The notes under the pieces are model-generated. The model had not been told where the DNA came from. It saw only the letters and a list, made by a program, of their open reading frames with translations, and made no database searches. A program made the position numbers and the translations under genes. From IMG/VR virus record IMGVR_UViG_3300036715_004471, positions 248,001 to 312,000 of that record: a DNA stretch of 64,000 nucleotides; one strand, written 5' to 3'. This document shows positions 1 through 20,556 of the stretch, in pieces. Each line of letters opens with the position of its first letter. Position 1 is the first letter of the stretch.

Positions 1-371
1 CATTTTTTATAAGCTTTTACTAATTCTTCTTCCGGAAAAATATCTCCATTAGAATTCTTATATGGCTTGATGCTTGGATCATTAGATGTCCAGCGCCAAG
101 TGCCACCTCTTTTATCCCAACCAACTTGTACTTGTTCTCCTCTAGCATTTAGCTTGAGAGTACCATCATCGTTGAGAGAAGATGCCTCAGCAGCATGCAT
201 CATAACAGCTGAGAAATACAAAAAGTCTTCAGCCTTAGGAGCTATCTTCTTAAGATTAGCGGCTGTTTTTCTAAAATTTTCCAATACTTCAGCACTGACT
301 GCCGGAATACAAGATTCTGTATTCTCAATTCTGCTGATTTCAATAAGTTCACCCAATTTGACAAATGGCAT
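1..371 (-). CDS. 5' part of a gene running off the left edge; probable prohead/capsid maturation protease
   Basis: Not in ORF track. My translation from ATG 371: MPFVKLGELIE...FRKTAANLKK...YKNSNGDIFPEEELVKAYKK(W), open to position 1. The NxNGDxFxxEEL motif resembles phage prohead proteases; lies in the portal/terminase module. Confidence 0.45.
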   Translation of the reverse strand, partial: MPFVKLGELIEISRIENTESCIPAVSAEVLENFRKTAANLKKIAPKAEDFLYFSAVMMHAAEASSLNDDGTLKLNARGEQVQVGWDKRGGTWRWTSNDPSIKPYKNSNGDIFPEEELVKAYKK

Positions 372-374
372 TAT

Positions 375-536
375 TTATCTCCCTGATTTCTTCTCTATTG
401 AAGTATCAGCACTGTCGTCCTCAGACTGCTTAGTTAATTTCTTTGACAAGTCATTAACAGATTGTTTTTGTTGTTCTGTTAATTCTTCTTCATCAAGAAC
501 AGTCATTATTTTTCCATCACCATGTTTTATAAACAT
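375..536 (-). CDS. small hypothetical protein (53 aa)
   Basis: ATG 536 preceded by GGAG; stop 3 nt before the next ATG. Confidence 0.6.
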   Translation of the reverse strand: MFIKHGDGKIMTVLDEEELTEQQKQSVNDLSKKLTKQSEDDSADTSIEKKSGR

Positions 537-640
537 CTTAACTCTCCGTCTGAGAGAATCATAATAAGTACAATTACTATAAGGAATTATTGCTATAACG
601 TGCAACTTACTCTCTCGTATACAACATTATTACCAAATTT

Positions 641-1288
641 TTAACCTACTTGTGTTCTCTCTTTTATTATTTCGTTTAGTTGATCTTGTCTTTTATTGAA
701 AAGATCTAGTATCAAAGGCGTTTTCTTCTGCACTCGCATTTGTAAATCGTCACTAACAGTATCAACCCAGCTTTTAGCCAAAATGTTGGATTGAATGTGA
801 GATTTGATTCTTTCATCAATGATCTCATCTATTTCTTCACACTGTTTTTGAATATTTTCAATTGAAGTTACTACAGTTTTGGCAAATTCTTTTGATTCCA
901 AATCATTAAAAACATCTGCAAAACTATTAACTTTTACTTCTAAATCATCAATTGAAGATATGAAAGACTTCATTAATTTTAGTGTTTGAGTATCTGAAGA
1001 AAAAACTTGCATTACATTAATACATTTGAATGCCGCAACCTTAAATTCATTAAAATTCTCAATTGATTTGTCTCTAAATCTTCTAATAGCTGCACGTGCC
1101 TTTTGAACATCATCGGGAGACATTTCTGGATTATCTTTGAATGGAGTTTTCATAATATCCAAATGATTGGATGCCATGTCTAACATTTTCAATGAATGAT
1201 TAAAACATAATAAGGCTCGTTCTGCCTGCATCTTTTCAGAATCAGAAACATCATATGTCATTTGAACAGAATAGCCCTTTTTAATCAT
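641..1288 (-). CDS. hypothetical helical protein
   Basis: Start MIKKGYS (1288) overlaps the upstream stop (ATGATTAA). Confidence 0.7.
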   Translation of the reverse strand: MIKKGYSVQMTYDVSDSEKMQAERALLCFNHSLKMLDMASNHLDIMKTPFKDNPEMSPDDVQKARAAIRRFRDKSIENFNEFKVAAFKCINVMQVFSSDTQTLKLMKSFISSIDDLEVKVNSFADVFNDLESKEFAKTVVTSIENIQKQCEEIDEIIDERIKSHIQSNILAKSWVDTVSDDLQMRVQKKTPLILDLFNKRQDQLNEIIKERTQVG

Positions 1289-2033: not shown

Positions 2034-2770
2034 ATCAGATTCCTTGTAATGTTATTTAAGACCTTTCTAATATATTGAGCATCATGATTAAATAACACAT
2101 GTTTAATGAAAGTAATAGATTGACCCATAGTTGCAGTAGCCGGCATATTCTTTATTGCCATCTCTTGTTCATTCAAATGATAAATCTTTGTTCTTAATTT
2201 AGGTAAAACAAAATCCCTTTTTTCCGCAGGTAATTTATTCAAAGTAAATCTAACAATGTCTGCCAAATACTTTCCTACTAGTATCGGATCTCCCAATTCA
2301 CTGAGGGCAGCATTTTTAACTAGTTTCTTCTTTATTTTGATAGGATGACTTTTATTGAATTTAATCAAAGAGTTTTGTAAGGCAATTTTCTCCGGTTTTT
2401 GCAATTTCTTTTTAACAGCCTTATCAAATTCTTTTTTGAATAGTTGCAAAAAATATATAACTTGTTCTTTAGAAGCTTCTTTTCTTAAACGACGCATAAT
2501 AGCAGAATATGAAAAATCATCAATTTGAGTCAAATCAATAACTTTTTCGTCCTGAGCATCACTCTTGTCTTTGAAATATTCTACTTGCTTTAATCTTTTT
2601 TCTGCACCTGATCTAGAACCAGAAGTTCCCAAATTCTTTCCTTTACCAGAAAGAACACGATACTTACCACTAGGCAATTTTTTAATACGCCCCTCTTTTA
2701 TGGTCAAGCACAATTGTTCATATTGGCTTGCCATTTTGGTTATTTGTTCTAGATTGTATGTCATAGTCAT
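2030..2770 (-). CDS. hypothetical protein
   Basis: 246-aa ORF with 4-nt overlaps to both neighbours; basic segment IKKLPSGKYRVLSGKGKNLGT...AEKRLKQVEYFK. Confidence 0.75.
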   Translation of the reverse strand: MTMTYNLEQITKMASQYEQLCLTIKEGRIKKLPSGKYRVLSGKGKNLGTSGSRSGAEKRLKQVEYFKDKSDAQDEKVIDLTQIDDFSYSAIMRRLRKEASKEQVIYFLQLFKKEFDKAVKKKLQKPEKIALQNSLIKFNKSHPIKIKKKLVKNAALSELGDPILVGKYLADIVRFTLNKLPAEKRDFVLPKLRTKIYHLNEQEMAIKNMPATATMGQSITFIKHVLFNHDAQYIRKVLNNITRNLI

Positions 2771-4145: not shown

Positions 4146-5432
4146 TTATCCCTTGATAGATTTTACTATTTGAAATAGCTTCAAAGCTGTTTCCGGATCA
4201 GAGCCTTGAATAGATTTCGCATATCTAGCAATATGAACTGCTAAGAATTTTGGCGATTCCTCCCCTAATGTTTCTAAAGAATCAAAAAATTGTTTATGTG
4301 CCGGGGCTAACTTTGTCTGTGTAGTGCGTGTAGAATTTGGAGATGGTTGGGGAGCCGTAATAGGATCAGCATCAGGATCCTGTACGCCTTGATCTGTTAT
4401 TTCTCCTGTGATTGGGTTAACATTTCTCATTCTCCCCTGATCAATAACATGAGGCGGCATTTGTGGAATTTTTGGAAGAGGAGGTGCTATTTGTGGAACT
4501 TTTCCAAGAGGACGAGATAATGGTTTATTTTGAACTAAAGTGATTGTTTGATCAGGATCAGGATTAATACCGCTACCGCCACCAGCTGGTGGAGCTGTAA
4601 CTTCTTTTTTTCCTAATTCATCTGGCTTGGTAGTAGTATCAACTTTAGTTGGAGCACTAAACTCTGGTCTCTCAATAAATCCTTTAACATGCTCAGTATA
4701 GAATTTCTTAAATCCTTTATCGCCATTTTCGAAGACATTAAAATTATTGGTTATTTTGTCTGACAAATTAATATATGCATCAGGATTTCTGGTAGCTCTG
4801 GCTTTTGCCATATCTTTCAAACTACTTAAAATGATACTCAATAGTTTTTCTGATTGTGCCAATAGAGATGTCGCATCATCTTTTAATTTCTTTATCTTGT
4901 GTGGGTATCTTTTTTCCCAAGCAGCTAAAGCCCTTCCTCTTTCAGTAGCAATGTTAGTAAAGAAATCTAACAAATTAGCTTCTTTTACAAAATAAGGCTG
5001 TAGGGAAGCGCTTTTTAATCTTCCGTTCAAATCTTGTAAATGTTTCTTTGTCTCATCATCCATATCTTGGAAAAGAAATTTCTCATGAGTTTTGTCAACA
5101 TTACTTTTGAATAAACCTAATAGGTGAGCAATATCATAAACCTTCTTATGAAATCTACCTAAATCTGCAACAACCCTCATGTATTCGCGTCTGTTTAAAT
5201 TAGACTTGATAGACTTAAGAACATCTTTCAAACTAGTAGCATCAGATGGAGCAGAAGCATCACCAACTTGTTCACCAGCAGCAATAGCTCTAACTCCATC
5301 ATCTACATTACGTAGATGATCCATAATTTGTTTGAATTCTGGATTAAAGTATTTTTCAGTGGCAATACCACTGACATTTGTCATCTCTCTTAACTTGTTA
5401 AGAAGACTTCTTTTTTGGGCAGTTTTCTGCAT
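4146..5432 (-). CDS. hypothetical, probably virion-associated protein with Pro-rich linker
   Basis: Start MQKTAQ preceded by AGAGG; directly downstream of portal. Confidence 0.7.
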   Translation of the reverse strand: MQKTAQKRSLLNKLREMTNVSGIATEKYFNPEFKQIMDHLRNVDDGVRAIAAGEQVGDASAPSDATSLKDVLKSIKSNLNRREYMRVVADLGRFHKKVYDIAHLLGLFKSNVDKTHEKFLFQDMDDETKKHLQDLNGRLKSASLQPYFVKEANLLDFFTNIATERGRALAAWEKRYPHKIKKLKDDATSLLAQSEKLLSIILSSLKDMAKARATRNPDAYINLSDKITNNFNVFENGDKGFKKFYTEHVKGFIERPEFSAPTKVDTTTKPDELGKKEVTAPPAGGGSGINPDPDQTITLVQNKPLSRPLGKVPQIAPPLPKIPQMPPHVIDQGRMRNVNPITGEITDQGVQDPDADPITAPQPSPNSTRTTQTKLAPAHKQFFDSLETLGEESPKFLAVHIARYAKSIQGSDPETALKLFQIVKSIKG

Positions 5433-5529
5433 AATAAAAACCCTCTGCATATATGTACCGGAATCTGTAAAACAATACAAGATTATACATACGTAGAGGG
5501 TTATTAACTATTTTGGATTAAATTCCTTA

Positions 5530-7377
5530 TTATTTTGGTGGCGGTCCACTTGGAGGAGGAGGTGGTGCTGAAGGAGGCTCTCCACCCAAAGGTCCGGAAG
5601 GCATTGGTGGAGGCATTCCTCCGCCTGGAGGCGCGCCCAAATCTAATCCTGGCATTCCACCTGGAGGTGGAGCTCCCATTTGTCCTGGCACAGTTCCATC
5701 TGCACCTGGTTGTGCAGGATTTTGTGATTGAGGAATTTCATCTTCATCATCCAAAGCTCTCAAAGAATTCAGATCAAGAGTGTCCAAAGACATTTGTTCT
5801 TTCTTAGCAATAGCATTTTGAATGGCTTCTTTACGTATCTTTCTAGTTTCATCTTCAAATTCTAAACCCATAGAACGATATAAAGTGTGAACTGATGCTC
5901 TTTTTTGATCGGCAGTTCCTTGTGTCAAGGTAACTAAAGTATTTATATAATCACCAGCATCAAATAATGACATATGATTCCAATCAATCTCTGGAACAAT
6001 TAATTGTTTTTCTCCATTGGAATAATCATAAAATCCTTGAATCTTAGAGATTGGGGCAAAAATCTTTCTTTTCAACCAAGTTGACATCATATTACGAAAT
6101 TGCATGTAACGCTGTCTCAAAACATCTAATGCTACACCACCGTTTGCATACGTAGTATCAGCACCACCATCCATTAAGACTGGTGGAACTTGTAATCCAA
6201 CATATATTTCTTTGATTATTTGAGTGATATCTCCAGAAATATCATATATGCCTTGACCATATCCAACTCTTTCAACTGCCACTCCTGCATGAGTAAAGAT
6301 TTTGAAATCTTTATCATATTGAGCTTCTTCGAAAATGCTTCTCCAAGCTTCTAAATCAGCAAATGTAGGATGAAGAGCATCATTTCCTTCTCCACCAATT
6401 TTTACTAAAGTTAATGGATTGATCATGTTATCTGCTTGAGCATACTTAGATTCTCTCAATTTATCGAATAACATAAGCTGTCTAAAAATACAAACAGGAA
6501 GCCCCGTGCCCCTGATTTCATAAGGGCTGATTCTTCTGGCTAAATGAGAAACATGAAAATTATCCAAAGGAATATTTTCGCCACGCTTTACAGAATCAAT
6601 AATGTGTTGATTAAGTTGTTTACGTTGTTCAATATCAGTTGATTTATTGGAAAAAATGATTTTCTTTAAATTCTCATCAGGATGTAACATGATAATTGGT
6701 TCATTAGCCACCACAGTACGTTTTACCAACATATAATCTGGGTTTTGAATCAATAATCTACTCCACTTACCCCTGCTTTCATCCAATTCAGCATAAACAA
6801 AAGATTCTCCCAAAAGCCAATACTCTTGAGCAATCTGCACGCAAATATTCATTAAATCAATTTCCTCAATCATGTCATTGAAGAATTTCTCAATATCTTT
6901 ATTGGGACATTTAATATTCAATTTGCTAATTGGATATGTACTATGAAGGTTAATAGCATTATGTACGAATGGATTCAAAGCATAAAAACTGCGACACCAA
7001 GCATTAATAGTAGCTCTATCTCTAGGAAGATTTAAGTTGCTATTAAGCCAAAGTGGAGAATATACTTCGGGAGCCTGCTTAACAGTGTCTCCATTTCCAC
7101 CACGATAACCGCCACCACTAACAATTTGAGCATATTTTTTCATGCCCACAGAAGCGGTAACAAATGAATTATGAGTTAAGTCATTTTCTTTATTAGAAGG
7201 ACCCGAACCATCTCTGAAGAAACCTTGTTCTACCTCATCTGCTAATCCGTCTCTACGTACGCTAGAAACGCCTTGAGCCATTAGAGCACTAACTTGGGGA
7301 ACAGTTGATCTTTTTTGCATAAACTGTTCTGAATTAGATGGTCCAACCCACCGTTTTGAAGATTTATTTACAGCCAT
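5530..7377 (-). CDS. portal protein (putative) with Pro/Gly-rich C-terminal tail
   Basis: 615 aa, immediately downstream of the terminase; NPFVHNAINLH, HLARRISPYEIRGT and NPLTLVKIG segments resemble large-phage portals. Confidence 0.7.
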   Translation of the reverse strand: MAVNKSSKRWVGPSNSEQFMQKRSTVPQVSALMAQGVSSVRRDGLADEVEQGFFRDGSGPSNKENDLTHNSFVTASVGMKKYAQIVSGGGYRGGNGDTVKQAPEVYSPLWLNSNLNLPRDRATINAWCRSFYALNPFVHNAINLHSTYPISKLNIKCPNKDIEKFFNDMIEEIDLMNICVQIAQEYWLLGESFVYAELDESRGKWSRLLIQNPDYMLVKRTVVANEPIIMLHPDENLKKIIFSNKSTDIEQRKQLNQHIIDSVKRGENIPLDNFHVSHLARRISPYEIRGTGLPVCIFRQLMLFDKLRESKYAQADNMINPLTLVKIGGEGNDALHPTFADLEAWRSIFEEAQYDKDFKIFTHAGVAVERVGYGQGIYDISGDITQIIKEIYVGLQVPPVLMDGGADTTYANGGVALDVLRQRYMQFRNMMSTWLKRKIFAPISKIQGFYDYSNGEKQLIVPEIDWNHMSLFDAGDYINTLVTLTQGTADQKRASVHTLYRSMGLEFEDETRKIRKEAIQNAIAKKEQMSLDTLDLNSLRALDDEDEIPQSQNPAQPGADGTVPGQMGAPPPGGMPGLDLGAPPGGGMPPPMPSGPLGGEPPSAPPPPPSGPPPK

Positions 7378-7437: not shown

Positions 7438-9318
7438 TTAAAATCTACGTCCAATATGCCCAGTGGTAATCAGTGGCTTGTTGGCTTCTTGAAACGTTTG
7501 TTGTTGAATCATTGGATTATTATTCTTGAAACCTTTAGTTAAGATAAACTTATAAGCCAAATAAGCATTTAATAAAGCCATAAATCCATCGTTTGGAGTA
7601 CCGCCTTTTACATAATGAATACTATGATCTCCATATTTAGAAATAGAAGGACTAATTTCCATACTAGCACAATGCTCGATTAACCAAGCAATTTTTTCAT
7701 AATCTCCAAAAGGAAACTTAACGTTACCCTTTTTCATTAATTCATAAAATTCACCAATATAATGATCTCTTTCAAAAACAATCTCTTTAGGAAAAGCATC
7801 AGCAGTATATTTAACGTGACCATTGACTTTATTATGAGCACGGGAAACTAGATAACGATCTCCATAAACATTATGCAACATTGAAGAAAAATCTTGAGAG
7901 AAACCAATATCTCCAACCGCCAACTGCACACTATATTGTCTCATAATTTGGTCAATTAAACCTTTCTTACTTTCCATATCATTTCTTTTGAATTTTGTTG
8001 CAAATTCAATGGATAATAAGTTTGGTCCTTTTGCTATTAATACTACGGCTGTGCTATAAGATTGACCTGTTAATTTAACTTTTTCTGGATTTGCTAACTG
8101 CTCTAAATCTGAACGAGCACCATAATCGATCCCTAAAACAACCAATTGATCTTTACTAGGTTCTATTCTGGCTCTAAATTTTCTACCGGGCTCGCCGCAC
8201 ATTTCCCTAATTTCTTCTACTGAAATTGGAGAGGCATCACCTTGATAAAATTCTCCCAATACTTCATTTTGATACACGCGTTCAGTGTTGATAGGATGTT
8301 TGCCCGGCTTTTCATTAATCAAATCTTCTCTGGTAAACATGGGCATGTAAATCTGATTGATATGAAAACCTATCATTTGACAATCTGGATCTTGTTCTGA
8401 TTTCAAAGCAATCCACTTGCCTCTTTCAGCAGCTTCGCGCTTATCTTGTTCATGACCACAATGAACACATTTAACTATGAATCCATGTATCCATATTTTT
8501 TCCCAATCATCACTTCCAGGAGTATATAATGGAAAATGATTCTCACATTTTTCACATCCTAAATAGAAGTATTGCTGAGATGATGATTGCCACATCTTGT
8601 GAAAATCAGAGCCTTTACGACGCGGCGTTCCAAAGTATACTTGTACACCTTTAGTTGGTTTACCATACTTAGCCGTAGTTAATACCTTCAAAGAGTTACC
8701 AATAGCCATACTGGTAGTCTTCTGAACTTCATCAAAAAATAACACATCAGCCGTACGACCCATGATGCGATCTCCATCCAAACCTACAGATTCTACCCAA
8801 ATATGATTTCCATTTACAAATTGTTTGAAATGCAAAGAATCATTGGTTGCACTGGTTTGATCTAATAATGATTGCATGTATGATTTAGGTCTCGCTGCTT
8901 TTTTACTTTCTTCTGGATTAGCTGGAAGAGACGAAGAAATCATTTGATTCAATTTAGTTTTAGAATAGGCGGCAGCTAATTCTAATTGAGGAAAAGCATG
9001 AATTACTCTAATTGGCGGCTTATCACCACTTCCAAAAATACCAGAGCCCATGAAGTACATTTCTAAAGCACCTGCCATGGTTGTTCCTCCAACCTGACGT
9101 CCCTTTACCATAATAACTGGTTTGGCATTTGGCTCTAAAGCTTTTATTCCAATGTATCTATAGATATCAGAAAAAGGTTTATACCCGTTGCCACTCAGAC
9201 GAAATGGTTTTCCATCTAGAGTAAGATAGTGCTCTACAAAAGCCACGGGATCAAGCATTATAAGTTGTCTTTTTAACTTTTCAAATAGTTCTTTGTCATC
9301 AATATTTAATGTCGGCAT
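7438..9318 (-). CDS. terL: terminase large subunit (lambda GpA-like)
   Basis: Walker A region VKGRQVGGTT, Walker B LFFDEVQ, CxxC pairs CEKC/CVHC between the domains, nuclease LGIDYG. Confidence 0.9.
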   Translation of the reverse strand: MPTLNIDDKELFEKLKRQLIMLDPVAFVEHYLTLDGKPFRLSGNGYKPFSDIYRYIGIKALEPNAKPVIMVKGRQVGGTTMAGALEMYFMGSGIFGSGDKPPIRVIHAFPQLELAAAYSKTKLNQMISSSLPANPEESKKAARPKSYMQSLLDQTSATNDSLHFKQFVNGNHIWVESVGLDGDRIMGRTADVLFFDEVQKTTSMAIGNSLKVLTTAKYGKPTKGVQVYFGTPRRKGSDFHKMWQSSSQQYFYLGCEKCENHFPLYTPGSDDWEKIWIHGFIVKCVHCGHEQDKREAAERGKWIALKSEQDPDCQMIGFHINQIYMPMFTREDLINEKPGKHPINTERVYQNEVLGEFYQGDASPISVEEIREMCGEPGRKFRARIEPSKDQLVVLGIDYGARSDLEQLANPEKVKLTGQSYSTAVVLIAKGPNLLSIEFATKFKRNDMESKKGLIDQIMRQYSVQLAVGDIGFSQDFSSMLHNVYGDRYLVSRAHNKVNGHVKYTADAFPKEIVFERDHYIGEFYELMKKGNVKFPFGDYEKIAWLIEHCASMEISPSISKYGDHSIHYVKGGTPNDGFMALLNAYLAYKFILTKGFKNNNPMIQQQTFQEANKPLITTGHIGRRF

Positions 9319-10637: not shown

Positions 10638-10642
10638 GATTT

Positions 10643-11604: not shown

Positions 11605-11997
11605 TTAAATCCACATTTCATTATAAAATGTGTTTCCAGAATCTGTCTCACCATATTGTGGTTGTTCGGGACTTGGACTATCCAAATCTTCTTGTGGAGA
11701 AATACCATCAGGTAAACCATAAAGAGATGGTTCGGCAGGACTTAAATACTTTTTTATTAAAGCATCAATATCAACAGGCTCATCTTCCACATAATCTCTT
11801 CCAAAATCTAATGTGCTTGGGTCTTTTCCTTCAAAATCATTTTCTAGCAAATATTCATCTAGATTCCCGCCAATTTGGGCGCCATCACTATATGAACCAC
11901 TTTCCCAATTGATAAAACTATCTCCTACTTGTTCATCTACCGGAAAATCAATAGCAGTTTTGACAATTGAATTTATGACCTCTGCTCTTACTCTCAT
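11605..11997 (-). CDS. hypothetical acidic protein
   Basis: 130-aa ORF in operon. Confidence 0.65.
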   Translation of the reverse strand: MRVRAEVINSIVKTAIDFPVDEQVGDSFINWESGSYSDGAQIGGNLDEYLLENDFEGKDPSTLDFGRDYVEDEPVDIDALIKKYLSPAEPSLYGLPDGISPQEDLDSPSPEQPQYGETDSGNTFYNEMWI

Positions 11998-12000
11998 GTT

Positions 12001-12324
12001 TTAAGAACGTTGCTTTCTATTTGAGTCATTATCTTCAATCCAAAAATCATCTGCTTTATATTTGTCCTGCATATGTTTACGTTTAGCATCTCTGAATTCT
12101 TTAATGCTTTTATATTTATGCATGTGATGCCATCCAGCACCAGGACCTAATTTAGGTTTTCCATCTACACCTTCAACATCATATAAATCAAAATTTCTGT
12201 AGAAAGGTTCTTTGAAACGAGGTTGAACTAAAATAGCCTTTTCTGCCTTATACTTTTTCTTTTTAGGGGTTGGCTCATTGCCGCCTCCGCCCCCTTGAAA
12301 ATATGCTGTTTTATTTTGAGACAC
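12001..12324 (-). CDS. hypothetical basic protein
   Basis: GTG start after AAGGTGG, overlapping the upstream stop. Confidence 0.65.
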   Translation of the reverse strand: MSQNKTAYFQGGGGGNEPTPKKKKYKAEKAILVQPRFKEPFYRNFDLYDVEGVDGKPKLGPGAGWHHMHKYKSIKEFRDAKRKHMQDKYKADDFWIEDNDSNRKQRS

Positions 12325-13084: not shown

Positions 13085-13086
13085 AA

Positions 13087-14913
13087 TTATCTAGCTGGTG
13101 CGGCTGTAGGTTTAGCTGGTTGAGGTGCTTCCGGTGGAGCAGGGGGCTTACTTAAATCTTCTTCGATATCAACTTCTGGAGTCTCTTTTGCCGGCTGCAT
13201 AGATTCTGCTAATTCACGATCAGCTTGCTCTGCTCTCATCTTTTTCTTAGTCTTATCCTTCTGTTCTTGCATTTCTAATTTTTGCCTAAATGCTTCATCT
13301 TCTGGAGATGTGCTTTTATTATCGCCTCTCAAATCTAAATCTTTTCCTTCTATTCCACCTTCCAATTTAGATAAAATATCATCTAAACGTGTAGCAATAT
13401 AGTTGTTTGATTCCAATGCTTTGTTAATAGCTTCTGATAAAGAAGGGAAGTATGCCGCCCAACCTTTACTATCTAACATCATATCAATGATTGAAAGTTG
13501 TCTTGGAATTTCTCTAGTTTTATAGACTTTGGCAATGTCTTTCAATTTGCTAATAATATCATTAACTGTTACATTAGCAAAAGCCGAATCAATGATTCTA
13601 TCAAAATCTCTTGATTCTGGTGAAGAACCTGCATCTACTTCGGCTACATTATCAGTAGAAGGTTTTAGTGTTTTTGATGGTTTTGGTGGAACCACTGGTG
13701 CGACTGGAGGTTTAGCCGGCATTTTAGATGCAGGTGGCGGAGGAACTTCTTGCGCTTCTGTAACCAATACCTCATCTTCAATATCATTAACATCTAAACT
13801 ATCGCTAACTTCTAAGATATCATCTTCTGATGCATGTTCATCATCTTTTTCACCTGGATCAAGATTCTTCAAAAATAAATCAATGCCTTTTGGTGTTGAT
13901 TCATTTGGTGCGCTTTCTGGAGGTGTTTGAGGCATTCCCGGACCAATAGATGGCAATCCTCCAGGAGCGCCAGTATTTTGTGTTGGAGGCGCTGGAGAAA
14001 CAGGAGTTATAGGCGCACCCACATCATTAGTTCCAGTTCCCGGAGGTGGCGGGTTATTGGCTTGAGAAATTGAAAATAGCAAATTAGCGGCTTTAACAAA
14101 ACCCTTCTTATTCATGATATTAGCCTCACGAATAATCATATCTTCATACAATTTAGTAGAGATACTAATCTTATTTACCATTTGAATTTTCTTTTTCAAT
14201 TGATAAATAATTTCCAATAGAGACTCAAATTCTTTTCCTGCAAAAATTTGTCCCTCATGTGTTCTTAATAATTTTTCTGCCGAATCTAATCTTCCAACAA
14301 TCTTATTTCTTTGCTTCTCTATAATACGTTTCTTTTCGGAAGCAGGAAGCTCGTCGGCAATAGAATCACGAGCCATATCAATGTCTTGTCCTTGGACAGA
14401 AGGCGTCTGTTCTTTTTGAGGATCTTGTTTGATATGCAAAAAATAACCTGGAGAACCATTTTCATACCATAATTGAGCCGTTTTGTATTTCAAATGAGTG
14501 TTTCCTTCGTAAAATTTCAACCAATTAAGAAAATCATAAGTTTCCATTGGATTCCAACCATTAGTGGCTTGTCTAATAGCGGCTATACGATTGGCACCAT
14601 TTCTTTCCTTATAATAAACTTCTCTAACTGTTTGTAACCATTTTGCAGTATCACGCGCTCCCGGAATATGAGAATATTGTTCATTATTTGGATAAGCTTT
14701 CTTATCTCCAACAATATCTCCTCTGCCTGTACCGTCTAAAAACTCTGAATCAAATCCACCATATGGATTTTTTATTTTTCCAAAGAAGTCCAATAGTTTT
14801 TGGATCTTAGCTTCCATTTCTGGTGTATAAACCTGATCTTGCTCCTCTGGAGCTACCCAAGTTTTATCTACCATTTTTGACCAAGGCATATCTGGTTTTA
14901 CTTTAATAGTCAT
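13087..14913 (-). CDS. large hypothetical protein with Pro-rich and acidic linkers
   Basis: 608-aa ORF in head module. Confidence 0.75.
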   Translation of the reverse strand: MTIKVKPDMPWSKMVDKTWVAPEEQDQVYTPEMEAKIQKLLDFFGKIKNPYGGFDSEFLDGTGRGDIVGDKKAYPNNEQYSHIPGARDTAKWLQTVREVYYKERNGANRIAAIRQATNGWNPMETYDFLNWLKFYEGNTHLKYKTAQLWYENGSPGYFLHIKQDPQKEQTPSVQGQDIDMARDSIADELPASEKKRIIEKQRNKIVGRLDSAEKLLRTHEGQIFAGKEFESLLEIIYQLKKKIQMVNKISISTKLYEDMIIREANIMNKKGFVKAANLLFSISQANNPPPPGTGTNDVGAPITPVSPAPPTQNTGAPGGLPSIGPGMPQTPPESAPNESTPKGIDLFLKNLDPGEKDDEHASEDDILEVSDSLDVNDIEDEVLVTEAQEVPPPPASKMPAKPPVAPVVPPKPSKTLKPSTDNVAEVDAGSSPESRDFDRIIDSAFANVTVNDIISKLKDIAKVYKTREIPRQLSIIDMMLDSKGWAAYFPSLSEAINKALESNNYIATRLDDILSKLEGGIEGKDLDLRGDNKSTSPEDEAFRQKLEMQEQKDKTKKKMRAEQADRELAESMQPAKETPEVDIEEDLSKPPAPPEAPQPAKPTAAPAR

Positions 14914-14918
14914 AGTGG

Positions 14919-15677
14919 TTACTCATTAATCTTTTTGTTTATGGTCTCATTGAGTAACTTAGCTTCTGCCAGCCTCATTTCTGAACTGGTACCAGACTCT
15001 TTATCTGGTGCTTTTAATTTAGCCATTTTCTCGTTAAAGACTTCCATGAAATATAAAGAAGTTTCCAAATCCATTTGAGAAAGAACTTCTTTGATTACAT
15101 CATGAAATACAGAAATATGCTGATCTACCACCTGCAAAGTAACGTTATGTTGTATTACTTGATCGGCGGCTGGTGTCTCTGTGAATTTATGACACTTATC
15201 TAATAGATTGCCTAGCACTTCTGCATAGTCAATCATTAATCTATCAATTCTAGTATTTATGTTTCGTGGATCTTCTTGAATCTCATCAAAAACTTGCGCA
15301 AAACGAGTTTCTAATCCAATTACCATTCTCTTGATAGTTTGTCTAATATCTAATTCTTCTTCTGCTGACTTTAACATAATAGTTTTGTAAGCAGGGGAAT
15401 TTTTAACAGTTAGTTGCAAATTATCTTCTGTAGAAGTGGCAAGAGCAACCTTGCTTTTGACAAGATCCTCCTGAATCAAACTATAAATATCTAAATAATT
15501 ATCTTGGAATGATTTAATAGATTTTTCAGCGATAACAAATTTTGCTTCGCTGACATTGGTGTATTTTGATTTTAACCAATCATAAATATCCTTAGATGAT
15601 ATTCCAAGGAATAGTTTAGAAATAATTTCATCCTTGTCGGGATGGTCCAATATTTTCTTGAGTGCTGTTTTGTTCAT
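14919..15677 (-). CDS. hypothetical protein; possible terminase small subunit
   Basis: N-terminal HTH-like ILDHPDKDEII..L..G.S...I..WL, central helical hairpin, head-module location. Function is inference only. Confidence 0.35.
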   Translation of the reverse strand: MNKTALKKILDHPDKDEIISKLFLGISSKDIYDWLKSKYTNVSEAKFVIAEKSIKSFQDNYLDIYSLIQEDLVKSKVALATSTEDNLQLTVKNSPAYKTIMLKSAEEELDIRQTIKRMVIGLETRFAQVFDEIQEDPRNINTRIDRLMIDYAEVLGNLLDKCHKFTETPAADQVIQHNVTLQVVDQHISVFHDVIKEVLSQMDLETSLYFMEVFNEKMAKLKAPDKESGTSSEMRLAEAKLLNETINKKINE

Positions 15678-15817: not shown

Positions 15818-15819
15818 AA

Positions 15820-15828
15820 ATTATAACA
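15820..15828 (-). promoter_or_regulatory. extended -10 promoter TGTTATAAT
   Basis: Perfect TGnTATAAT just after the endonuclease stop. Confidence 0.6.
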
Positions 15829-15829
15829 T

Positions 15830-16732: not shown

Positions 16733-16771
16733 ATAATAATGAGTTATTATTCCTAGAATACCTTCCCTAGT

Positions 16772-17482
16772 TTAATTATTTTGTCCCAAACGTCCGCTTC
16801 TAGTATCGAAAATTGCATGAGTAGGAACGCCTAAACCTTGAGTTTGTTGTGACACATCGCCACCAGGAACCTTGGTTCCATTATTTAACTCAAAACCAGT
16901 TTCAAAATTGTATGTTTTTTTATCCATTTCACATTGCCAAATATGCTCACCTACACGAGATATTTGAACACCCGCATGATCAGGACAATATCTTGTGCTT
17001 AAAGGAGCTTCAAGAATATTAAACTGTTTTATAAACTTGCTCTTATCAATTGCCTTTTCTGAGTCTGCAATTTTATTGGTTTTTGCTAATTCTTTACGAG
17101 GATCTTCATATTTCTTTTTCAACTCTTCTAATCTATTATCTTCTAGATCTTTTCTAGCAGCTAAAGCATTAGGTGGAGCAGCAATAGTCAACAACAACTC
17201 ATCAATTACAGATGCTTGTTTTTTTAATTCTGGATCGCCAGATGAATATAGCGCAGTAGCAAGAGCAGCCATGCCGTCTATCGAATCCGGAGTAATTACA
17301 GATTCAACAGGTTCAATAGCATCTACTTGCTCGGCGGCATTTTTTAACAATTGGGCAGCTAAAACACAAGATTCAGCCACTATGTTAGCGCAAGTGTCAT
17401 CACCTTCTGCTAACATAAGTGCTTCGTTGTTTGGACTCTCTAGCCAAGAAGCCATAGTATTCAATAATTCAGCTATTCTCAT
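16772..17482 (-). CDS. hypothetical protein with C-terminal Cys/His motif
   Basis: YCPDH...WQC near the C-terminus. Confidence 0.7.
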   Translation of the reverse strand: MRIAELLNTMASWLESPNNEALMLAEGDDTCANIVAESCVLAAQLLKNAAEQVDAIEPVESVITPDSIDGMAALATALYSSGDPELKKQASVIDELLLTIAAPPNALAARKDLEDNRLEELKKKYEDPRKELAKTNKIADSEKAIDKSKFIKQFNILEAPLSTRYCPDHAGVQISRVGEHIWQCEMDKKTYNFETGFELNNGTKVPGGDVSQQTQGLGVPTHAIFDTRSGRLGQNN

Positions 17483-18467
17483 AGGTACCCTTTAATAAAA
17501 GTTTGTCAAGAAACTTCAAAACACCGTCGCTTCGAATAAGGCGTTGACGATCTTCTTCAATTATTCTTTGAGCATGTGCATCATCTCTTTGTTGAATCAA
17601 TGGTTGCATACGCTCTCTTTCAAGCCTGGCAGCCTCTTCTTTACGCAATTTTGATTTCTCTTTTAGTTCTTTAATTTTAGCTAACTCATCTTCTGAAACT
17701 TCGGTTTCAGGCTCTGCTCCATGTTCAAAATAACTATCATTATCAGACAACCTTTGTCTGATAAGTTGAGCTAGATATTCTACCTCTCTGCTTAATTCGG
17801 GAGCATCCGCAGGACGATGACCTCTATCTATGGCATTGATAACAGTTGTTAGTTTTTGTCTTAATTCTGGATACTCCAAAACTTTCGTTACAATATCTAA
17901 AGTAGTTAACCCCATAGCTTGAGCTTCTGGAGTAATCAAAAATCTCTGTATTTTATCTTTACTTAATTCTTTTCTTTGAGGTTCAATTAAACCACCTGCT
18001 AATGACCCTTCTGGAACTAAGGTTTTTAATTTTATAGCAGCTTTTTCTAATAATCCAAAGATCCTGGTTAAAGCAGTTTCATACTTTGATTTTATATGTT
18101 CTCTGTATTGAATATCACTTTGTCTTTTGATTCTGATAGCATCATGAATAAAGTTTCTAACCTTTTTCTCTGGATCTTTTTTATATTCAGAAATGATTTT
18201 TAGAACTTCATTCACTTGTGTAAAAAGTGTGGGAGCATCGTAATCATTTATGTTTTTCACCAAATCTTCCATTATTTCAACTAATTTGGTAGTTTCTGGT
18301 TCATTAAACTCTTTTGATACTTTACTAATAACCGGTTCTTTTGCAGTTTCTGATACATGTAGCTGATAAGCTAGCTTAATTTCCTTCTTAGCCTCATCTA
18401 ATTTAGTAGAAGCTAATTTGAGAACATATTTAACCTCAACAGCTTTTGCTAGCCTCTCTGTTGTCAT
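17469..18467 (-). CDS. hypothetical coiled-coil protein
   Basis: 332-aa ORF overlapping the next gene. Confidence 0.7.
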   Translation of the reverse strand: MTTERLAKAVEVKYVLKLASTKLDEAKKEIKLAYQLHVSETAKEPVISKVSKEFNEPETTKLVEIMEDLVKNINDYDAPTLFTQVNEVLKIISEYKKDPEKKVRNFIHDAIRIKRQSDIQYREHIKSKYETALTRIFGLLEKAAIKLKTLVPEGSLAGGLIEPQRKELSKDKIQRFLITPEAQAMGLTTLDIVTKVLEYPELRQKLTTVINAIDRGHRPADAPELSREVEYLAQLIRQRLSDNDSYFEHGAEPETEVSEDELAKIKELKEKSKLRKEEAARLERERMQPLIQQRDDAHAQRIIEEDRQRLIRSDGVLKFLDKLLLKGTYENS

Positions 18468-18472
18468 TTGTA

Positions 18473-20080
18473 TTACCCAAAAATCTTGTAGTTGTTAAAT
18501 GTAACAGCTTCGTAACCTTCTTCCATACCTTTCCTATATAGAGGTCTGCAATTACCTTCTTTATCAATGTAAGTCTTATGAACCGGTAGTCCAGTGTGTG
18601 AACAAATTGGATGTTCACTGGAAGCACTTTTAATCATTTTGTTGCAAGTTGGTTCGGCAGAAGCGTTAGCGACCTTGCCTGATAATCCTTGAACAAAAGC
18701 TTGGAATCCAAAGGCATATGCTTTTGCATCTCTAGAATTTGCTAATACATTCAAAGCATCTTCAGCACCTTCATGATTTCCTTCACTTAGTGCTTTCTTA
18801 ATATTAGTAATTAATTCACTTGGTTTAAGATTATACACAGGTGAGGCGGAGGCAGCAGCTTTGAAGTCAGAATGGTTACTCTTAACTAGAGTGTTTATGG
18901 TTTCTTCGCTGAAAGAACCAACAGTTCCATTACATAGCATTACAGATGGTGAAGAGATCTTACCATTTGCAACCTTAATTGGCACAGTAAATCCTACACG
19001 ACCATTATTTAATGCAACGCTCAAATAAATTGCGCCCGGCTCTGATCCTGATACTGTAATTTGCGGATTTTTATATCCAAATCCAAGAATTTCACGAGCA
19101 ACACATTCGCGAGCTAATTTTACAACTTGTTCTCCAAATTGTAACATTGCCGTACCTTGTGGCGAAGCAAATTTCTCTTCAAATGATTGGAATTCATCAG
19201 ATTTTGGTAGTTCAACATCTTTTACAGATGCTTCTGCCATCTTTTGACCAACAATCTGATTGTGAAAGAATTCTGACTTTCCCTGTCTAGTAGCATTAAG
19301 TTTAGTCAATGCTAATTCAGCCGCACTAATTTCTCTATTTTCAGTAGATGCTTGAGTTAGTAAACTCAAGATAGATGTTCCGCTAGCTTTTAATTTGCTA
19401 CCAGCATTAGTGGTAACATACTTTTTAACATTAGTATGATCCAAATCTTGTGGACCAGTATTACCCATAAAAACAGATGCTTCTGAAAGTTTTCCGCGAT
19501 GAATTTCTACTGGAACATAAAATCCAGTAACACCTTTTGGAGTTTCGTATTCTGCTCTAATCATTAAAAACTTATCATTACCATCTTCCATTACTAATGA
19601 AGATGGTCTCAAGTTCCAAGAATCTAAAGTAGAAGCAACGGTTTTTATAGCTTGATTAGCCAAACTTTGATTATACATCTTAACAGGGGAACCATCAAAA
19701 ACACTATTTAAAGCATTTGATAAAATTTGATCTCCTACCTGATAAGGGTTAAGCATGGCAGCATCATCTCTTTCATAAGTCTTGATATTAGGCTCATTAT
19801 CAATGATACCTAACTCATCTTGAAAAAGCTCAGCCACTTTGTTATTACGTGAATACAATTTATTGTATAGTGATTTGAAATCAGCCTTTTTAATAAAAAG
19901 TGTGTTATTGGATGCCATTTTTTCGATTACTCTAGACATGGATCCCAAAGTCTGATCTTGGGGGTAGAGGTTCACGTACTTAGCCAATTTAGCCGCAAGA
20001 ATTGGTGTAGCCAATTTTTCATTGTCGTCTATTGATTTAGCTAGTGAACTTACTAATTGCTGAATTTTTTCGAGACTCAT
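18473..20080 (-). CDS. large hypothetical protein with C-terminal Cys/His motif
   Basis: 535 aa; CNK...CSHTGLPVH...CRP. Confidence 0.75.
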   Translation of the reverse strand: MSLEKIQQLVSSLAKSIDDNEKLATPILAAKLAKYVNLYPQDQTLGSMSRVIEKMASNNTLFIKKADFKSLYNKLYSRNNKVAELFQDELGIIDNEPNIKTYERDDAAMLNPYQVGDQILSNALNSVFDGSPVKMYNQSLANQAIKTVASTLDSWNLRPSSLVMEDGNDKFLMIRAEYETPKGVTGFYVPVEIHRGKLSEASVFMGNTGPQDLDHTNVKKYVTTNAGSKLKASGTSILSLLTQASTENREISAAELALTKLNATRQGKSEFFHNQIVGQKMAEASVKDVELPKSDEFQSFEEKFASPQGTAMLQFGEQVVKLARECVAREILGFGYKNPQITVSGSEPGAIYLSVALNNGRVGFTVPIKVANGKISSPSVMLCNGTVGSFSEETINTLVKSNHSDFKAAASASPVYNLKPSELITNIKKALSEGNHEGAEDALNVLANSRDAKAYAFGFQAFVQGLSGKVANASAEPTCNKMIKSASSEHPICSHTGLPVHKTYIDKEGNCRPLYRKGMEEGYEAVTFNNYKIFG

Positions 20081-20100
20081 TTAGCATCCTATAATGTTTG

Positions 20101-20556
20101 TTAGACCAATTCCGGATATTTGTTTAGAACTGCTTCCTTAGAAGCCGCTGATAATTCATTAAGCAATGCCTTTACCAATTTCTTGTTCTCAGCTAATCTA
20201 GTTGGTAAGTAATCTTTTACTTTACTGATCTCACTACTAGGTATCCCTAGCTTGGAAGATGCTACCCTTACTATAGGGTCACCTTTATAAGAAATCTGTA
20301 AATCACCAGCAGTCTTGCTAATTGCGACATCCCAAACCGCAGCAGTCTTCTCATCTTCTGGTTGGTAAAGTGATACAATGTATTCGCCATCATCAGAGCT
20401 TTGAACTTGCCATAAATCAGCGCCACTGTCTCCGTCCTTAAATCTTACAACATCGAACGCAACAGTTTCAAGGCGATCTTTCACATCTTCAAGTCTATAG
20501 GCTTTTTTGTAAAGTTTGTTCTCCAGCCTTGAGTAATCTATTGAAAATTTTGACAT
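20101..20556 (-). CDS. hypothetical protein
   Basis: Start MSKFS after GGGAG. Confidence 0.7.
   Translation of the reverse strand: MSKFSIDYSRLENKLYKKAYRLEDVKDRLETVAFDVVRFKDGDSGADLWQVQSSDDGEYIVSLYQPEDEKTAAVWDVAISKTAGDLQISYKGDPIVRVASSKLGIPSSEISKVKDYLPTRLAENKKLVKALLNELSAASKEAVLNKYPELV

What the first reader, a model, noticed from the sequence alone, without database searches (positions are those of the whole stretch)
1..20556. Recurrent K-T-A / K-x-A motif near the N-termini and linkers of head-module proteins: candidate prohead-protease processing signal
Seen: KTA occurs nine times in this module's minus-strand ORFs by my count: FRKTAA (ORF <1-371), MQKTAQ (4146), KKTASD (9984), IVKTAI (11605), QNKTAY (12001), KYKTAQ (13087), MNKTAL (14919), and DEKTAA and ISKTAG (20101). 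Four of these lie within the first ~15 residues. Variants include VKEAN, VKNAA, KSTAQ, VKEGQ, KKYAQ (portal), TKMAS, LKLAS and IKSAS. The distant ORF 60055 also starts MIKTAK. Known: T4 gp21 and phiKZ gp175 cleave head proteins after short x-x-E motifs. Inference: this phage may use an Ala-P1 (K-x-A) signal, with the edge ORF as the protease, and 60055-61578 may be an unlinked internal head protein.
Basis: partly seen in the sequence, partly recalled or inferred. Interest (0 to 1): 0.6.

Follow-up and report, generated by a model that had tools for sequence, protein, structure and literature searches.

The report
Head-protein K-x-A motif, likely protease site
In this 446-kb giant phage a short motif (hydrophobic-x-Lys-x-Ala) is enriched and unusually conserved only in head-gene proteins, next to a capsid-maturation protease gene, so it is probably the cut-site signal of that protease, though nobody has shown cleavage.

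Summary
As a count, KTA does not survive a look-elsewhere correction: it ranks 107th of 6,539 tripeptides for local clustering. The wider K-x-A idea holds up. In 30 orthologue families from about 160 related metagenomic phage loci, K-x-A is among the best conserved i/i+2 residue pairs (5th, 3rd and 2nd of 222 classes), often as an island in variable sequence. In 21 replication-gene control families it is ordinary. The conserved sites extend to hydrophobic-x-K-x-A, often followed by Q, S, A or N. This motif is 2.5-2.7 times enriched only in genome 225-270 kb, which runs from the capsid protein to window 20574. Tail genes, terminase and enzymes lack it. Distant Bacillus phage G shows the same enrichment in its head block only. 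The edge ORF is a 1,206-aa fusion of a protease and a scaffold-like region. Its protease domain folds like T4 gp21 and the herpesvirus proteases and keeps invariant His133 and Ser184. The most likely reading is a new prohead-protease recognition motif. Cleavage is unproven, and the cut could fall after Ala or after Lys. ORF 60055 as a head protein is not supported.

The parts
1..371 (-). First 123 codons of a 1,206-aa protease-scaffold fusion (genome 244751-248371, P0001). The protease core is about residues 45-250, followed by an acidic, helical, scaffold-like region.
   Evidence: phrog_18299, 2.6e-14; phage G gp19, 34% id; invariant H59, H133, S184; T4 gp21 Z 8.3; VZV 7.6; HCMV 6.0
261..269 (-). 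K35-T-A37 (FRKTAA) in the N-terminal helix before the protease core. Orthologues read KFA, KTA, KVA or KIA. Phage G gp19 has LVKTAA at the homologous place.
   Evidence: The whole block is conserved, so the site itself is not diagnostic.
240..248 (-). K42-I-A44 (LKKIAP), a second site just before the protease core. Phage G gp19 has VVKIAP.
2309..2317 (-). K152-N-A154 (LVKNAA) in ORF 2030-2770. K and A are 100% conserved, and P2 is 60%.
5418..5426 (-). KTA of MQKTAQ in ORF 4146-5480, the gene after the portal. The true start is Met17 (window 5432). Orthologues read M-[QDE]-K-x-A-Q.
4977..4985 (-). K166-E-A168 (FVKEAN) in ORF 4146-5480. This is a conserved island: pair conservation 0.90 against flank 0.34.
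5530..7377 (-). Portal protein. It carries MKKYAQ at residues 79-84 (nt 7129-7137), before the conserved portal core. K and Q are 100% conserved, and P1 is A or G.
7438..9318 (-). Large terminase. It has no hydrophobic-x-K-x-A site (0 observed, 0.96 expected) and serves as an internal negative.
10344..10352 (-). KTA of KKKTAS in ORF 9984-10637 (true start Met11). K and A are nearly invariant in a gappy, variable, low-complexity linker. In the AF2 model the site sits in the disordered interdomain stretch 87-113 (pLDDT below 50).
10530..10538 (-). K-D-A of LQKDAV in the same protein, at the end of a helix. K is invariant.
11953..11961 (-). KTA of IVKTAI in ORF 11605-11997. K-x-A is kept in only about half of the orthologues. 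The conserved element is the following IDFPIDD.
12304..12312 (-). KTA of QNKTAY in ORF 12001-12324. K-x-[A/G/S]-Y-F-Q-G is conserved. The same module occurs twice inside the protease-scaffold protein.
14476..14484 (-). KTA of KYKTAQ in ORF 13087-14913. All 36 orthologues keep K-x-A (x = F, T, M, V or Y) inside a conserved block. Further conserved sites are at nt 14086-14094 (FVKAAN) and 14695-14703 (GDKKAY).
15663..15671 (-). KTA of MNKTAL in ORF 14919-15677. The Ala is not conserved (A, T, S or M), so this is probably a chance instance. A better conserved site, KSKVAL, is at nt 15444-15452.
17213..17344 (-). ORF 16772-17482 sites LLKNAA (nt 17336-17344) and LKKQAS (nt 17213-17221), both conserved.
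20308..20349 (-). DEKTAA and ISKTAG in ORF 20101-20574. Each is kept in most of 5 relatives that are 70-83% identical overall, so this is uninformative. It marks the upstream end of the enriched block.
61564..61572 (-). KTA of MIKTAK in ORF 60055-61578. It lies outside the enriched block in a replication/ATPase/ClpP neighbourhood. This is not counted as part of the system.

Best explanation
The window comes from a 446.5-kb megaphage distantly related to Bacillus phage G. Its head-gene block runs from genome ~232.7 to 268.6 kb, which is window -15,240 to +20,574. That block encodes an assemblin-fold serine protease fused to a ~950-residue scaffold-like region. It also encodes a set of proteins that carry a short linear motif: hydrophobic(L/F/I/M/V)-x-Lys-x-Ala(rarely Gly or Ser), often followed by Gln, Ser, Ala or Asn. 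The motif most likely is the recognition and cleavage signal of that prohead protease. On this reading the protease is built into the procapsid through its scaffold part. It then trims short N-terminal propeptides (about 5-45 residues) from the capsid protein (LVKYA at residues 22-26) and from several candidate internal head proteins. It would also trim about 83 residues from the portal, cut exposed linkers such as KKKTAS in ORF 9984, and chop its own scaffold region at 14 or more conserved sites. Shown: the identity and fold of the protease; the head-block-specific enrichment; the specific conservation of K and A with a free middle residue; the replication in phage G; and a disordered-linker location for one site. 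Inferred: that the motif is cut at all; that this protease does it; and the register. A cut after Ala would give P1 = Ala as in herpesvirus assemblins (own knowledge). A cut after Lys would give hydrophobic(P3)-x-Lys(P1), parallel to T4's L/I-x-Glu and to HK97's cleavage after Lys (own knowledge). KTA itself is only one instance, because position x is unconstrained.
For: Protease. Conservation in 30 head-side families (86 K-x-A sites): mean within-protein ranks are 0.635, 0.685 and 0.707 (p = 7e-6, 2e-9, 1e-11), placing K-x-A 5th, 3rd and 2nd of 222 classes. In 21 replication-side control families the ranks are 0.467, 0.467 and 0.513 (not significant), 73rd of 124 classes. Head versus control comparison gives p = 9e-5, the top of 148 classes. 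The signal survives removal of the protease-scaffold protein, holds in each sub-region, and is unchanged at matched depth. 19 of 24 families have mean island rank above 0.5. R-x-A, K-x-S, K-x-T, E-x-A and Q-x-A, and the T4-type and phiKZ-type x-x-E classes, show nothing. At conserved sites K goes to R in only about 2% of orthologue residues and A goes to G or S in about 5%; P2 is free; P5 is hydrophobic in 68% against 34% at non-conserved sites. Enrichment of hydrophobic-x-K-x-A against within-protein shuffles: 43 vs 18.6 and 19 vs 6.9 in the block, 137 vs 145.8 elsewhere. Only the three contiguous 15-kb blocks from 225 to 270 kb stand out among 30. Tail proteins, TerL and the enzymes have about zero sites. 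Phage G head block: 29 vs 10.8 (p = 3e-6), and with [QSAN] 12 vs 2.3 (p = 6e-6); two 50-kb control blocks give ratios 0.5-1.4. The G protease keeps LVKTAA/VVKIAP at the homologous place. The site in ORF 9984 lies in a disordered linker. No paralogy inflates the counts.
Against: There is no experimental cleavage evidence for this phage, its relatives or phage G in the literature I could reach. The KTA count that prompted the finding is not significant after look-elsewhere. Many conserved sites sit in uniformly conserved or helical segments where constraint may be structural, for example protease sites 35, 787 and 802 and MCP site 24. Hydrophobic-x-K-x-A sites are also somewhat better conserved than other K-x-A sites in the controls (n = 10), so part of the P5 effect is generic. 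Shuffles do not model helical periodicity, and head-assembly proteins are helix-rich. Removing only five residues (MQKTA of ORF 4146) is an odd use of a protease. The mobile HNH endonuclease carries three motif instances. The phage G capsid protein has no K-x-A and no N-terminal extension. The complex prediction gave no answer.
Confidence: 0.55

Rival explanations
1. The motif is a real head-specific short linear motif but not a cleavage site. It could be a capsid-targeting or scaffold/portal-docking peptide that brings internal proteins into the procapsid. It might be joined to a separate cleavage site, as in the T4 capsid-targeting sequences (own knowledge).
For: The same enrichment and conservation data apply. 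N-proximal placement is seen in several candidate internal proteins. M-x-K-x-A at the very N-terminus (ORF 4146) fits a docking tag better than a five-residue propeptide.
Against: The motif also occurs many times inside the scaffold region and in interdomain linkers, which fits degradation and processing better than targeting. Near-invariant Lys plus a small residue, with a free residue between them, is typical of a protease subsite pattern. A dedicated protease gene sits in the same block and carries the motif before its own core.
Confidence: 0.17
2. There is no specific signal. K-x-A (hydrophobic-x-K-x-A) is a by-product of amphipathic helices in the Lys/Ala/Leu-rich, helix-rich assembly proteins of the head block. 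It is conserved because the Ala and the hydrophobic residue pack and the Lys is a common helix former.
For: Several sites lie in predicted helices or in uniformly conserved blocks (K34 at a helix end). K-x-L is also mildly elevated in head families. In the controls, sites with a hydrophobic P5 are better conserved than those without. Residue shuffles ignore helical periodicity.
Against: Lys is almost never exchanged for Arg at these sites. R-x-A, E-x-A, Q-x-A and K-x-S show no effect in the same proteins. The clearest sites are islands in gappy, low-complexity or disordered sequence (ORF 9984 K96/A98, w-10550:28, w-7907:10). The same motif is enriched in the phage G head block, most of whose proteins have no detectable sequence similarity to this phage's.
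Confidence: 0.17
3. Chance. The reader picked a tripeptide and a region after seeing the sequence, and nothing biological underlies it.
For: KTA ranks only 107th of 6,539 tripeptides for local clustering, and shuffles always give more extreme cases. N-terminal M-x-K-x-A is at expectation. One listed site (MNKTAL) is not conserved and another (IVKTAI) is only half conserved.
Confidence: 0.04
4. The motif is read by another protease, for example the two phage ClpP paralogues (window 62327-63509) working with a host unfoldase, rather than by the assemblin-fold enzyme.
For: Two ClpP genes lie in the window. [quoted passage not shown]
Against: ClpP is not sequence-specific in this way (own knowledge). 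No ClpX was found in this genome. The ClpP genes lie 40 kb from the enriched block. The assemblin-fold protease is inside the block and bears the motif itself.
Confidence: 0.05

Closest known systems
T4 gp21 and phiKZ gp175 / SPN3US gp245 prohead proteases with their x-x-Glu cleavage motifs
   Same: The protease fold is the same: T4 gp21 is the best structural match (Z 8.3). The logic is the same: a three-residue recognition frame with a free middle position, N-terminal propeptides on many head and internal proteins, many sites in scaffold-type proteins, and the enzyme processing itself (own knowledge; PMC10052503).
   Different: The recognition residues differ: Lys and Ala, plus a hydrophobic residue two positions upstream, instead of L/I-x-E or S/A/G-x-E. 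[LI]-x-E and [SAG]-x-E classes show no special conservation here. Pfam Peptidase_S77 does not match anywhere in the genome. The enzyme is fused to a scaffold-like region about 950 residues long.
Herpesvirus assemblins (HCMV, VZV, HSV proteases)
   Same: The fold is the same (VZV Z 7.6, HCMV Z 6.0). The protease is fused to a scaffold protein in one polypeptide. Cleavage is after Ala with a preference at P3 and Ser at P1' (own knowledge). If the cut here falls after Ala, P1 and partly P1' (S, Q or A) agree.
   Different: P3 is Lys here rather than a hydrophobic residue, and the hydrophobic residue sits at P5. Sequence identity is only 12-14%. The catalytic triad was not verified in 3D.
HK97 gp4-type prohead proteases (Pfam Peptidase_S78) and protease-scaffold fusions of lambda/P2 type
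   Same: It is a His/Ser protease of the same superfamily encoded between the portal and the capsid protein. The His-to-Ser spacing is about 50 residues (H133, S184). The HK97 capsid protein is cut after a Lys (own knowledge), which is the alternative register for this motif. Fusion to a scaffold has precedent (own knowledge).
   Different: Pfam finds no S78 or any other domain in this protein or its homologues. No defined K-x-A-type consensus is known to me or was found in the literature searched.
Bacillus phage G gp19 (head maturation protease) and the phage G head block
   Same: gp19 is an orthologous protease (34% identity over 214 residues). The K-x-A pair before the core is conserved. 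The motif is enriched in the same way and only in the head block.
   Different: gp19 is a 300-aa stand-alone protease, not fused to a scaffold. The phage G capsid protein lacks the roughly 41-residue N-terminal extension and has no K-x-A. Most other head-block proteins have no detectable similarity.

Membership tests
Assemblin-fold prohead/capsid maturation serine proteases (T4 gp21, HK97 gp4, herpesvirus assemblin superfamily) | Assemblin / gp21 beta-barrel fold | tested here: met
   AF2 model of residues 1-290 (mean pLDDT 76.5). An unbiased VIA scan of 48,161 chains puts T4 gp21 (Z 8.3, rmsd 3.1 A over 129 residues), VZV protease (Z 7.6) and HCMV protease (Z 6.0) at ranks 1-3. Foldseek lists the same proteins first but with weak E-values of 0.03-0.5.
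Assemblin-fold prohead/capsid maturation serine proteases | Conserved catalytic His and Ser, with His about 50 residues before Ser | tested here: inconclusive
   H133 (in CxDHKSS) and S184 (in VSMG) are invariant in 26 homologues down to 47% identity, as is H59. Their spatial proximity in the model could not be checked, and the loop at residues 134-138 has pLDDT below 50.
Assemblin-fold prohead/capsid maturation serine proteases | Sequence-profile membership | tested here: met
   phrog_18299 'head maturation protease' at E = 2.6e-14 and phrog_4523 'major head and protease protein' at E = 1e-3. 34% identity to phage G gp19. Pfam S77, S78 and all other Pfam models do not match.
Assemblin-fold prohead/capsid maturation serine proteases | Gene located in the head morphogenesis block between the portal and the major capsid protein | tested here: met
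   The transcription order on the minus strand is TerL, portal..., protease-scaffold..., decoration-position gene, MCP.
Prohead-protease cleavage motif (as defined for T4, phiKZ, SPN3US) | Motif enriched in head proteins and not in tail or non-structural proteins | tested here: met
   own genome; phage G.
Prohead-protease cleavage motif | Motif positions conserved among relatives while the surroundings vary; sites near N-termini and in exposed linkers | tested here: met
   29% of conserved sites lie in the first 50 residues, against 15% of all residues. This positional effect is modest.
Prohead-protease cleavage motif | Mature virion proteins begin directly after the motif; cleavage depends on the protease | not testable with these tools
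   No proteomic N-terminal data were reachable. The complex prediction gave no answer.
Internal head / ejection protein (claim for ORF 60055-61578) | Encoded with head genes, or shown in virions, and carrying conserved protease sites | tested here: not met
   The neighbourhood is topoisomerase, ATPases, ClpP and DksA. Its 15-kb block is not enriched. It has a single N-terminal K-x-A, kept in four of the five distinct N-termini. There are no family hits.

The most novel reading that the evidence does not exclude
A large, globally distributed clade of megaphages of about 350-500 kb, including the only cultivated one (phage G), uses an assemblin-fold prohead protease with a previously undescribed specificity: hydrophobic-x-Lys-x-Ala. 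The motif then marks the full set of head-internal or ejected proteins. That set would include the unknown proteins upstream of the terminase (window 9984-20574), and it would allow the mature head proteome of uncultivated megaphages to be read from sequence.
Probability: 0.5. Interest if true: 0.65.

Novelty: new variant of a known kind. Interest (0 to 1): 0.55.

Why it matters
Prohead-protease motifs (T4 L/I-x-E, phiKZ and SPN3US S/A/G-x-E) have been the key to working out which proteins of giant phage heads are processed, packaged and ejected. No such rule exists for the phage G-like megaphages, most of whose head proteins have no known function. A sequence rule that is head-block specific, conserved across hundreds of environmental relatives and shared with phage G would do three things. 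It would nominate the substrates, including a block of unknown genes upstream of the terminase. It would correct gene starts. And it can be tested directly in a cultivable system (phage G) by N-terminomics. If the cut falls after Lys, ordinary tryptic proteomics would have missed it, which is a practical warning for such studies. It would also show how far subsite specificity has drifted within a single protease fold, from Glu to Ala or Lys.

Tried and rejected
- Raw KTA enrichment as evidence: rejected after the look-elsewhere test.
- N-terminal M-x-K-x-A starts as a genome-wide signal: at chance, 4 observed against 3.2 expected.
- Pfam Peptidase_S77 and the Gp23 capsid family in the genome: no match. 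The capsid protein is HK97-like, found through phage G gp27 and phrog_2522.
- Megablast of the portal/TerL DNA against the phage collection: no match.
- Pfam and PDB sequence searches on the protease domain: nothing.
- Word-index protein search: only close relatives without Pfam domains.
- Complex prediction of the protease core with the N-terminal 45 residues of w-11844: 'no answer', score 0.01. This is not evidence either way.
- Literature: the Gonzalez 2020 phage G structure paper is not held. Hua 2017 and the 2025 phage G multi-omics paper give no N-terminal or cleavage data, and no supplement is held. No paper reporting a K-x-A prohead motif was found.
- Viral fold search for ORF 9984 and the Atlas search for ORF 13087: no functional lead.
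- ClpXP as the responsible protease: no ClpX in the genome.
- T4-type and phiKZ-type x-x-E motifs: no special conservation.
- A DNA-level motif as the cause: considered and rejected by reasoning, because the middle codon is unconstrained. Not tested separately.
- Paralogy as a source of repeated sites: only two weak paralogue pairs in the block.

Full report
**What the window is.** The window is bases 248,001-312,000 of a single 446,541-bp virus record. Nearly all genes are on the minus strand. The closest annotated relative is Bacillus phage G (497 kb). The portal is 34% identical, the major capsid protein 54%, and the edge-ORF N-terminal domain 34% identical to gp19. No other protein of the phage G head block gives a BLAST hit. 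IMG/VR holds hundreds of environmental relatives, with portal identity of 73-95% and capsid protein identity of 88-95%. Several of these are 350-480 kb records. Names on some protein homologues point to Cytophagaceae and Flammeovirgaceae metagenome bins.

**Check of the observation.** KTA occurs 9 times in window 1-20574, or 10 times when the edge ORF is read to its full length. Genome-wide it occurs 36 times against 34.3 expected from composition, so there is no global excess. The module holds 10 against 2.07 expected, a nominal p of 6e-5. When every tripeptide is scanned for its densest window of the same size, KTA ranks 107th of 6,539, and all 30 within-protein shuffles produced at least five tripeptides as extreme. 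Starts of the form M-x-K-x-A are at expectation, 4 against 3.2, given the strong Lys bias at positions 2-5. So the count that prompted the finding is not, by itself, more than chance.

**What the region holds.** It also holds a tyrosine-phosphatase-like protein (1281-2033), a poly(A)-polymerase/CCA-type nucleotidyltransferase (12311-13084) and an HNH endonuclease (15830-16732) that only 5-6 relatives share. The rest are proteins without family matches. The major capsid protein lies outside the window at genome 234204-235217. Between it and the window edge lie nine to ten genes of unknown function.

**The edge ORF.** It continues to 1,206 residues (P0001).

- Residues 106-216 match phrog_18299 'head maturation protease' (E = 2.6e-14). 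They also match the N-terminus of phrog_2774, a family of roughly 1,260-aa proteins.
- Phage G gp19, its homologue, is annotated as a head maturation protease (PMC12484599).
- Pfam finds nothing in it or in its homologues.
- An AlphaFold2 model of residues 1-290 (mean pLDDT 76.5) was compared with 48,161 representative chains. The top three matches are T4 gp21 (Z 8.3), VZV protease (Z 7.6) and HCMV protease (Z 6.0). All other rows match only the C-terminal helical hairpin.
- H59, H133 and S184 are invariant.
- The remaining ~950 residues are acidic and helical, with two ~95-residue repeats.

**The motif in relatives.** I built orthologue alignments for 30 families between genome ~232 and 265 kb from the portal-centred and capsid-centred loci. 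For every position I measured three things, each ranked within its own protein: joint conservation of residues i and i+2, the same value minus the mean of the flanks, and the same value minus the conservation of the middle residue.

- The 86 K-x-A sites have mean ranks of 0.635, 0.685 and 0.707 (p = 7e-6, 2e-9, 1e-11). K-x-A is 5th, 3rd and 2nd of 222 residue-pair classes, behind only Pro/Gly-containing or aromatic classes.
- In 21 control families around the DnaE-type polymerase (window 22-46 kb), 41 K-x-A sites have mean ranks of 0.467, 0.467 and 0.513. That places K-x-A 73rd of 124 classes.
- Compared directly between head and control families, K-x-A is the most different of 148 classes (p = 9e-5).
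- The effect survives removal of the protease-scaffold protein. It holds separately outside the window, inside it and upstream of the terminase. It is unchanged when the alignments are thinned to 15 sequences. It is spread over 19 of 24 families.
- R-x-A, K-x-S, K-x-T, E-x-A and Q-x-A show nothing, nor do the T4-type [LI]-x-E and phiKZ-type [SAG]-x-E classes.

**Shape of the motif.** At the 38 sites with pair conservation of 0.7 or more, Lys is replaced by Arg in about 2% of orthologue residues and Ala by Gly or Ser in about 5%. The middle residue is free (Y, I, T, E, K, L, V, Q, N and others). The residue two positions before Lys is hydrophobic in 68% of sites, against 34% at poorly conserved K-x-A sites. 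Gln, Ala and Ser are among the commonest residues after Ala. Examples are listed here.

| Protein | Site |
|---|---|
| Capsid protein | LVKYAA, residues 22-27 |
| Portal | MKKYAQ, residues 79-84 |
| ORF 4146 | FVKEAN |
| ORF 2030 | LVKNAA |
| Scaffold region | LVKNAQ |
| w-11844 | FFKIAQ |
| w-6731 | LSKIAS |
| w-7907 | IKKYAD |
| w-10550 | LFKQAQ |

Several sites are islands in poorly conserved, gappy sequence.

- w-10550 site 28: pair conservation 0.93, middle residue 0.02, flanks 0.24.
- ORF 9984 (KKKTAS): pair conservation 0.91, flanks 0.30.
- For ORF 9984 an AF2 model puts K96-T-A98 (numbered from the true Met) in the only long stretch without secondary structure, residues 87-113. Its pLDDT is below 50 at 91-93 and 97-107. 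It lies between a helical N-terminal part and a confident C-terminal helical domain.

They differ in quality.

- Well supported: MQKTAQ, KKTASD, QNKTAY and KYKTAQ.
- FRKTAA is conserved, and shared with phage G gp19, but sits in a uniformly conserved helix.
- IVKTAI is kept in about half of the orthologues.
- MNKTAL does not keep its Ala.
- DEKTAA and ISKTAG could be compared in only five close relatives.

**Distribution.** Counts are against within-protein shuffles.

| Region | hydrophobic-x-K-x-A observed | Expected |
|---|---|---|
| Genome 211-255.4 kb | 43 | 18.6 (p = 9e-7) |
| TerL to window 20574 | 19 | 6.9 (p = 1e-4) |
| Rest of the genome | 137 | 145.8 |

- In 15-kb blocks, only the three contiguous blocks from 225 to 270 kb stand out among 30 (2.5-2.7 times; p = 1e-3 to 5e-5).
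- Gene by gene, the enriched stretch runs from about 232.7 kb, two genes beyond the capsid gene, to window 20574.
- The large tail proteins at 205-232 kb have almost no sites. The terminase, phosphatase, nucleotidyltransferase and glucosaminidase have none.
- Paralogy does not explain the counts.
- One oddity is that the mobile HNH endonuclease has three instances.

**Independent replication.** The motif was fixed on this phage and then counted in phage G.

- Its head block (1-28.8 kb) has K-x-A 69 vs 41.4, hydrophobic-x-K-x-A 29 vs 10.8 (p = 3e-6), and 12 vs 2.3 with [QSAN] after Ala (p = 6e-6).
- Two 50-kb blocks elsewhere give ratios of 0.5-1.4.
- Many of the phage G sites are N-proximal: gp13 ISKTAA (from residue 5), gp20 LKKTAL (8), gp38 LIKKAS (4), gp9 LSKVAA (18), portal MAKQAA (16) and gp21 RKKLAR (8).
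- The phage G capsid protein starts about where residue 42 of this phage's capsid protein aligns, and it has no K-x-A.

**Interpretation.** Five facts fit a prohead-protease recognition motif.

- The motif is specific to the head block.
- It is absent from tail and enzyme genes.
- Lys and a small residue are nearly invariant around a free position.
- It occurs near N-termini, in linkers and repeatedly in the scaffold region.
- It lies next to, and within, an assemblin-fold protease gene.

These are the features by which the T4, phiKZ and SPN3US motifs are known (own knowledge; PMC10052503). I give this reading about 0.55.

The register is open. A cut after Ala would resemble the herpesvirus enzymes, which cut after Ala (own knowledge). 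A cut after Lys would give hydrophobic(P3)-x-Lys(P1), the same frame as T4's L/I-x-Glu, and would resemble HK97's cut after Lys (own knowledge). In that case tryptic proteomics could not see it.

**Rivals.**

- A docking or targeting motif without cleavage (0.17).
- A by-product of amphipathic helices in helix-rich assembly proteins (0.17).
- Another protease such as ClpP (0.05). Two ClpP genes are in the window and no ClpX was found.
- Chance (0.04).

**ORF 60055-61578.** It lies among replication-type and ATPase genes in a block without enrichment. Its M-x-K-x-A start is kept in four of the five distinct N-termini. Nothing supports it as a head protein.

**Limits.**

- No cleavage data exist in the papers I could reach.
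- The single complex prediction gave no answer.
- The positions counted in the statistics are not phylogenetically independent, so the p-values are guides. The class rankings, the head-versus-control contrast and the phage G replication carry the argument.
- The hydrophobic P5 position was noticed on the same data in which its enrichment was then counted for this genome. The phage G count is free of that circularity.

Noticed in passing
window 62327-62953 and 62925-63509 (-): Two tandem, slightly overlapping ClpP paralogues (Pfam CLP_protease, E = 1e-47 and 1e-46), next to a DksA/TraR-type zinc-finger gene (63512-63865). No ClpX was found in the genome. In phage G, ClpP and ClpX were reported in virion proteomics.
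   Followed up: partly
genome 415813-416304 (-), i.e. about window +167.8 kb: A second, partial capsid-protein-like ORF of 163 aa, 38% identical to the N-terminal half of phage G gp27, far from the head block.
   Followed up: no
window 12250-12324 (N-terminus of ORF 12001-12324); P0001 residues ~386-460 and ~477-560 (genome 244751-248371): A shared module, K-x-[A/G]-Y-[F/Y]-Q-G...(E/A)PTP...PKYP, occurs at the N-terminus of the 107-aa ORF and twice, as ~95-residue repeats, inside the protease-scaffold protein. It occurs nowhere else in the genome or in the phage G head block. Its function is unknown. It may be a docking element.
   Followed up: partly
window 5432 and 10637: Orthologue conservation shows that the longest-ORF starts are wrong. 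ORF 4146-5480 starts at Met17 (MQKTAQ...), and ORF 9984-10667 starts at Met11 (MSKYSRHQ...).
   Followed up: yes
window 15830-16732 (-): An HNH endonuclease (phrog_681, phrog_559) is present in only 5-6 of the roughly 80 related loci, so it is probably a mobile insertion in the block. It carries three hydrophobic-x-K-x-A instances of its own: FIKKAN, FVKEAN and MIKNAG.
   Followed up: partly
proteins P0054, P0055 (homologues of the protease domain): Some environmental homologues of the protease carry Hint/intein Pfam domains (PF05203, PF01079, PF13403, PF07591, PF14890). This suggests inteins inserted in the protease gene of some relatives.
   Followed up: no
whole genome, place not located: The strongest local tripeptide clusters in the genome are Arg-rich (LRR, RRR, LRL, RLR, RHR; p down to 1e-11). 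Genome GC is 38.7% against 32-36% in the window. This may be a GC-rich island or wrong-frame ORF calls.
   Followed up: no
L002 (genome 236156-238526): w-11844 and w-10550: Both candidate internal head proteins have a conserved hydrophobic, membrane-helix-like stretch: consensus ...VAVLAGIAALLGA in w-11844 and ...GWIFKIALASAGLMVAG in w-10550.
   Followed up: no
window 32031-35546 (-): A DnaE-type (Pol III alpha-like) polymerase of 1,171 aa is conserved at 66-96% identity in relatives. Phage G also encodes a Pol III-like polymerase.
   Followed up: no
record level: IMG/VR classes this 446.5-kb record, and several relatives, as 'provirus' with 100% completeness, while one relative (G002, 452 kb) has direct terminal repeats. 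The provirus label looks doubtful for this clade.
   Followed up: no
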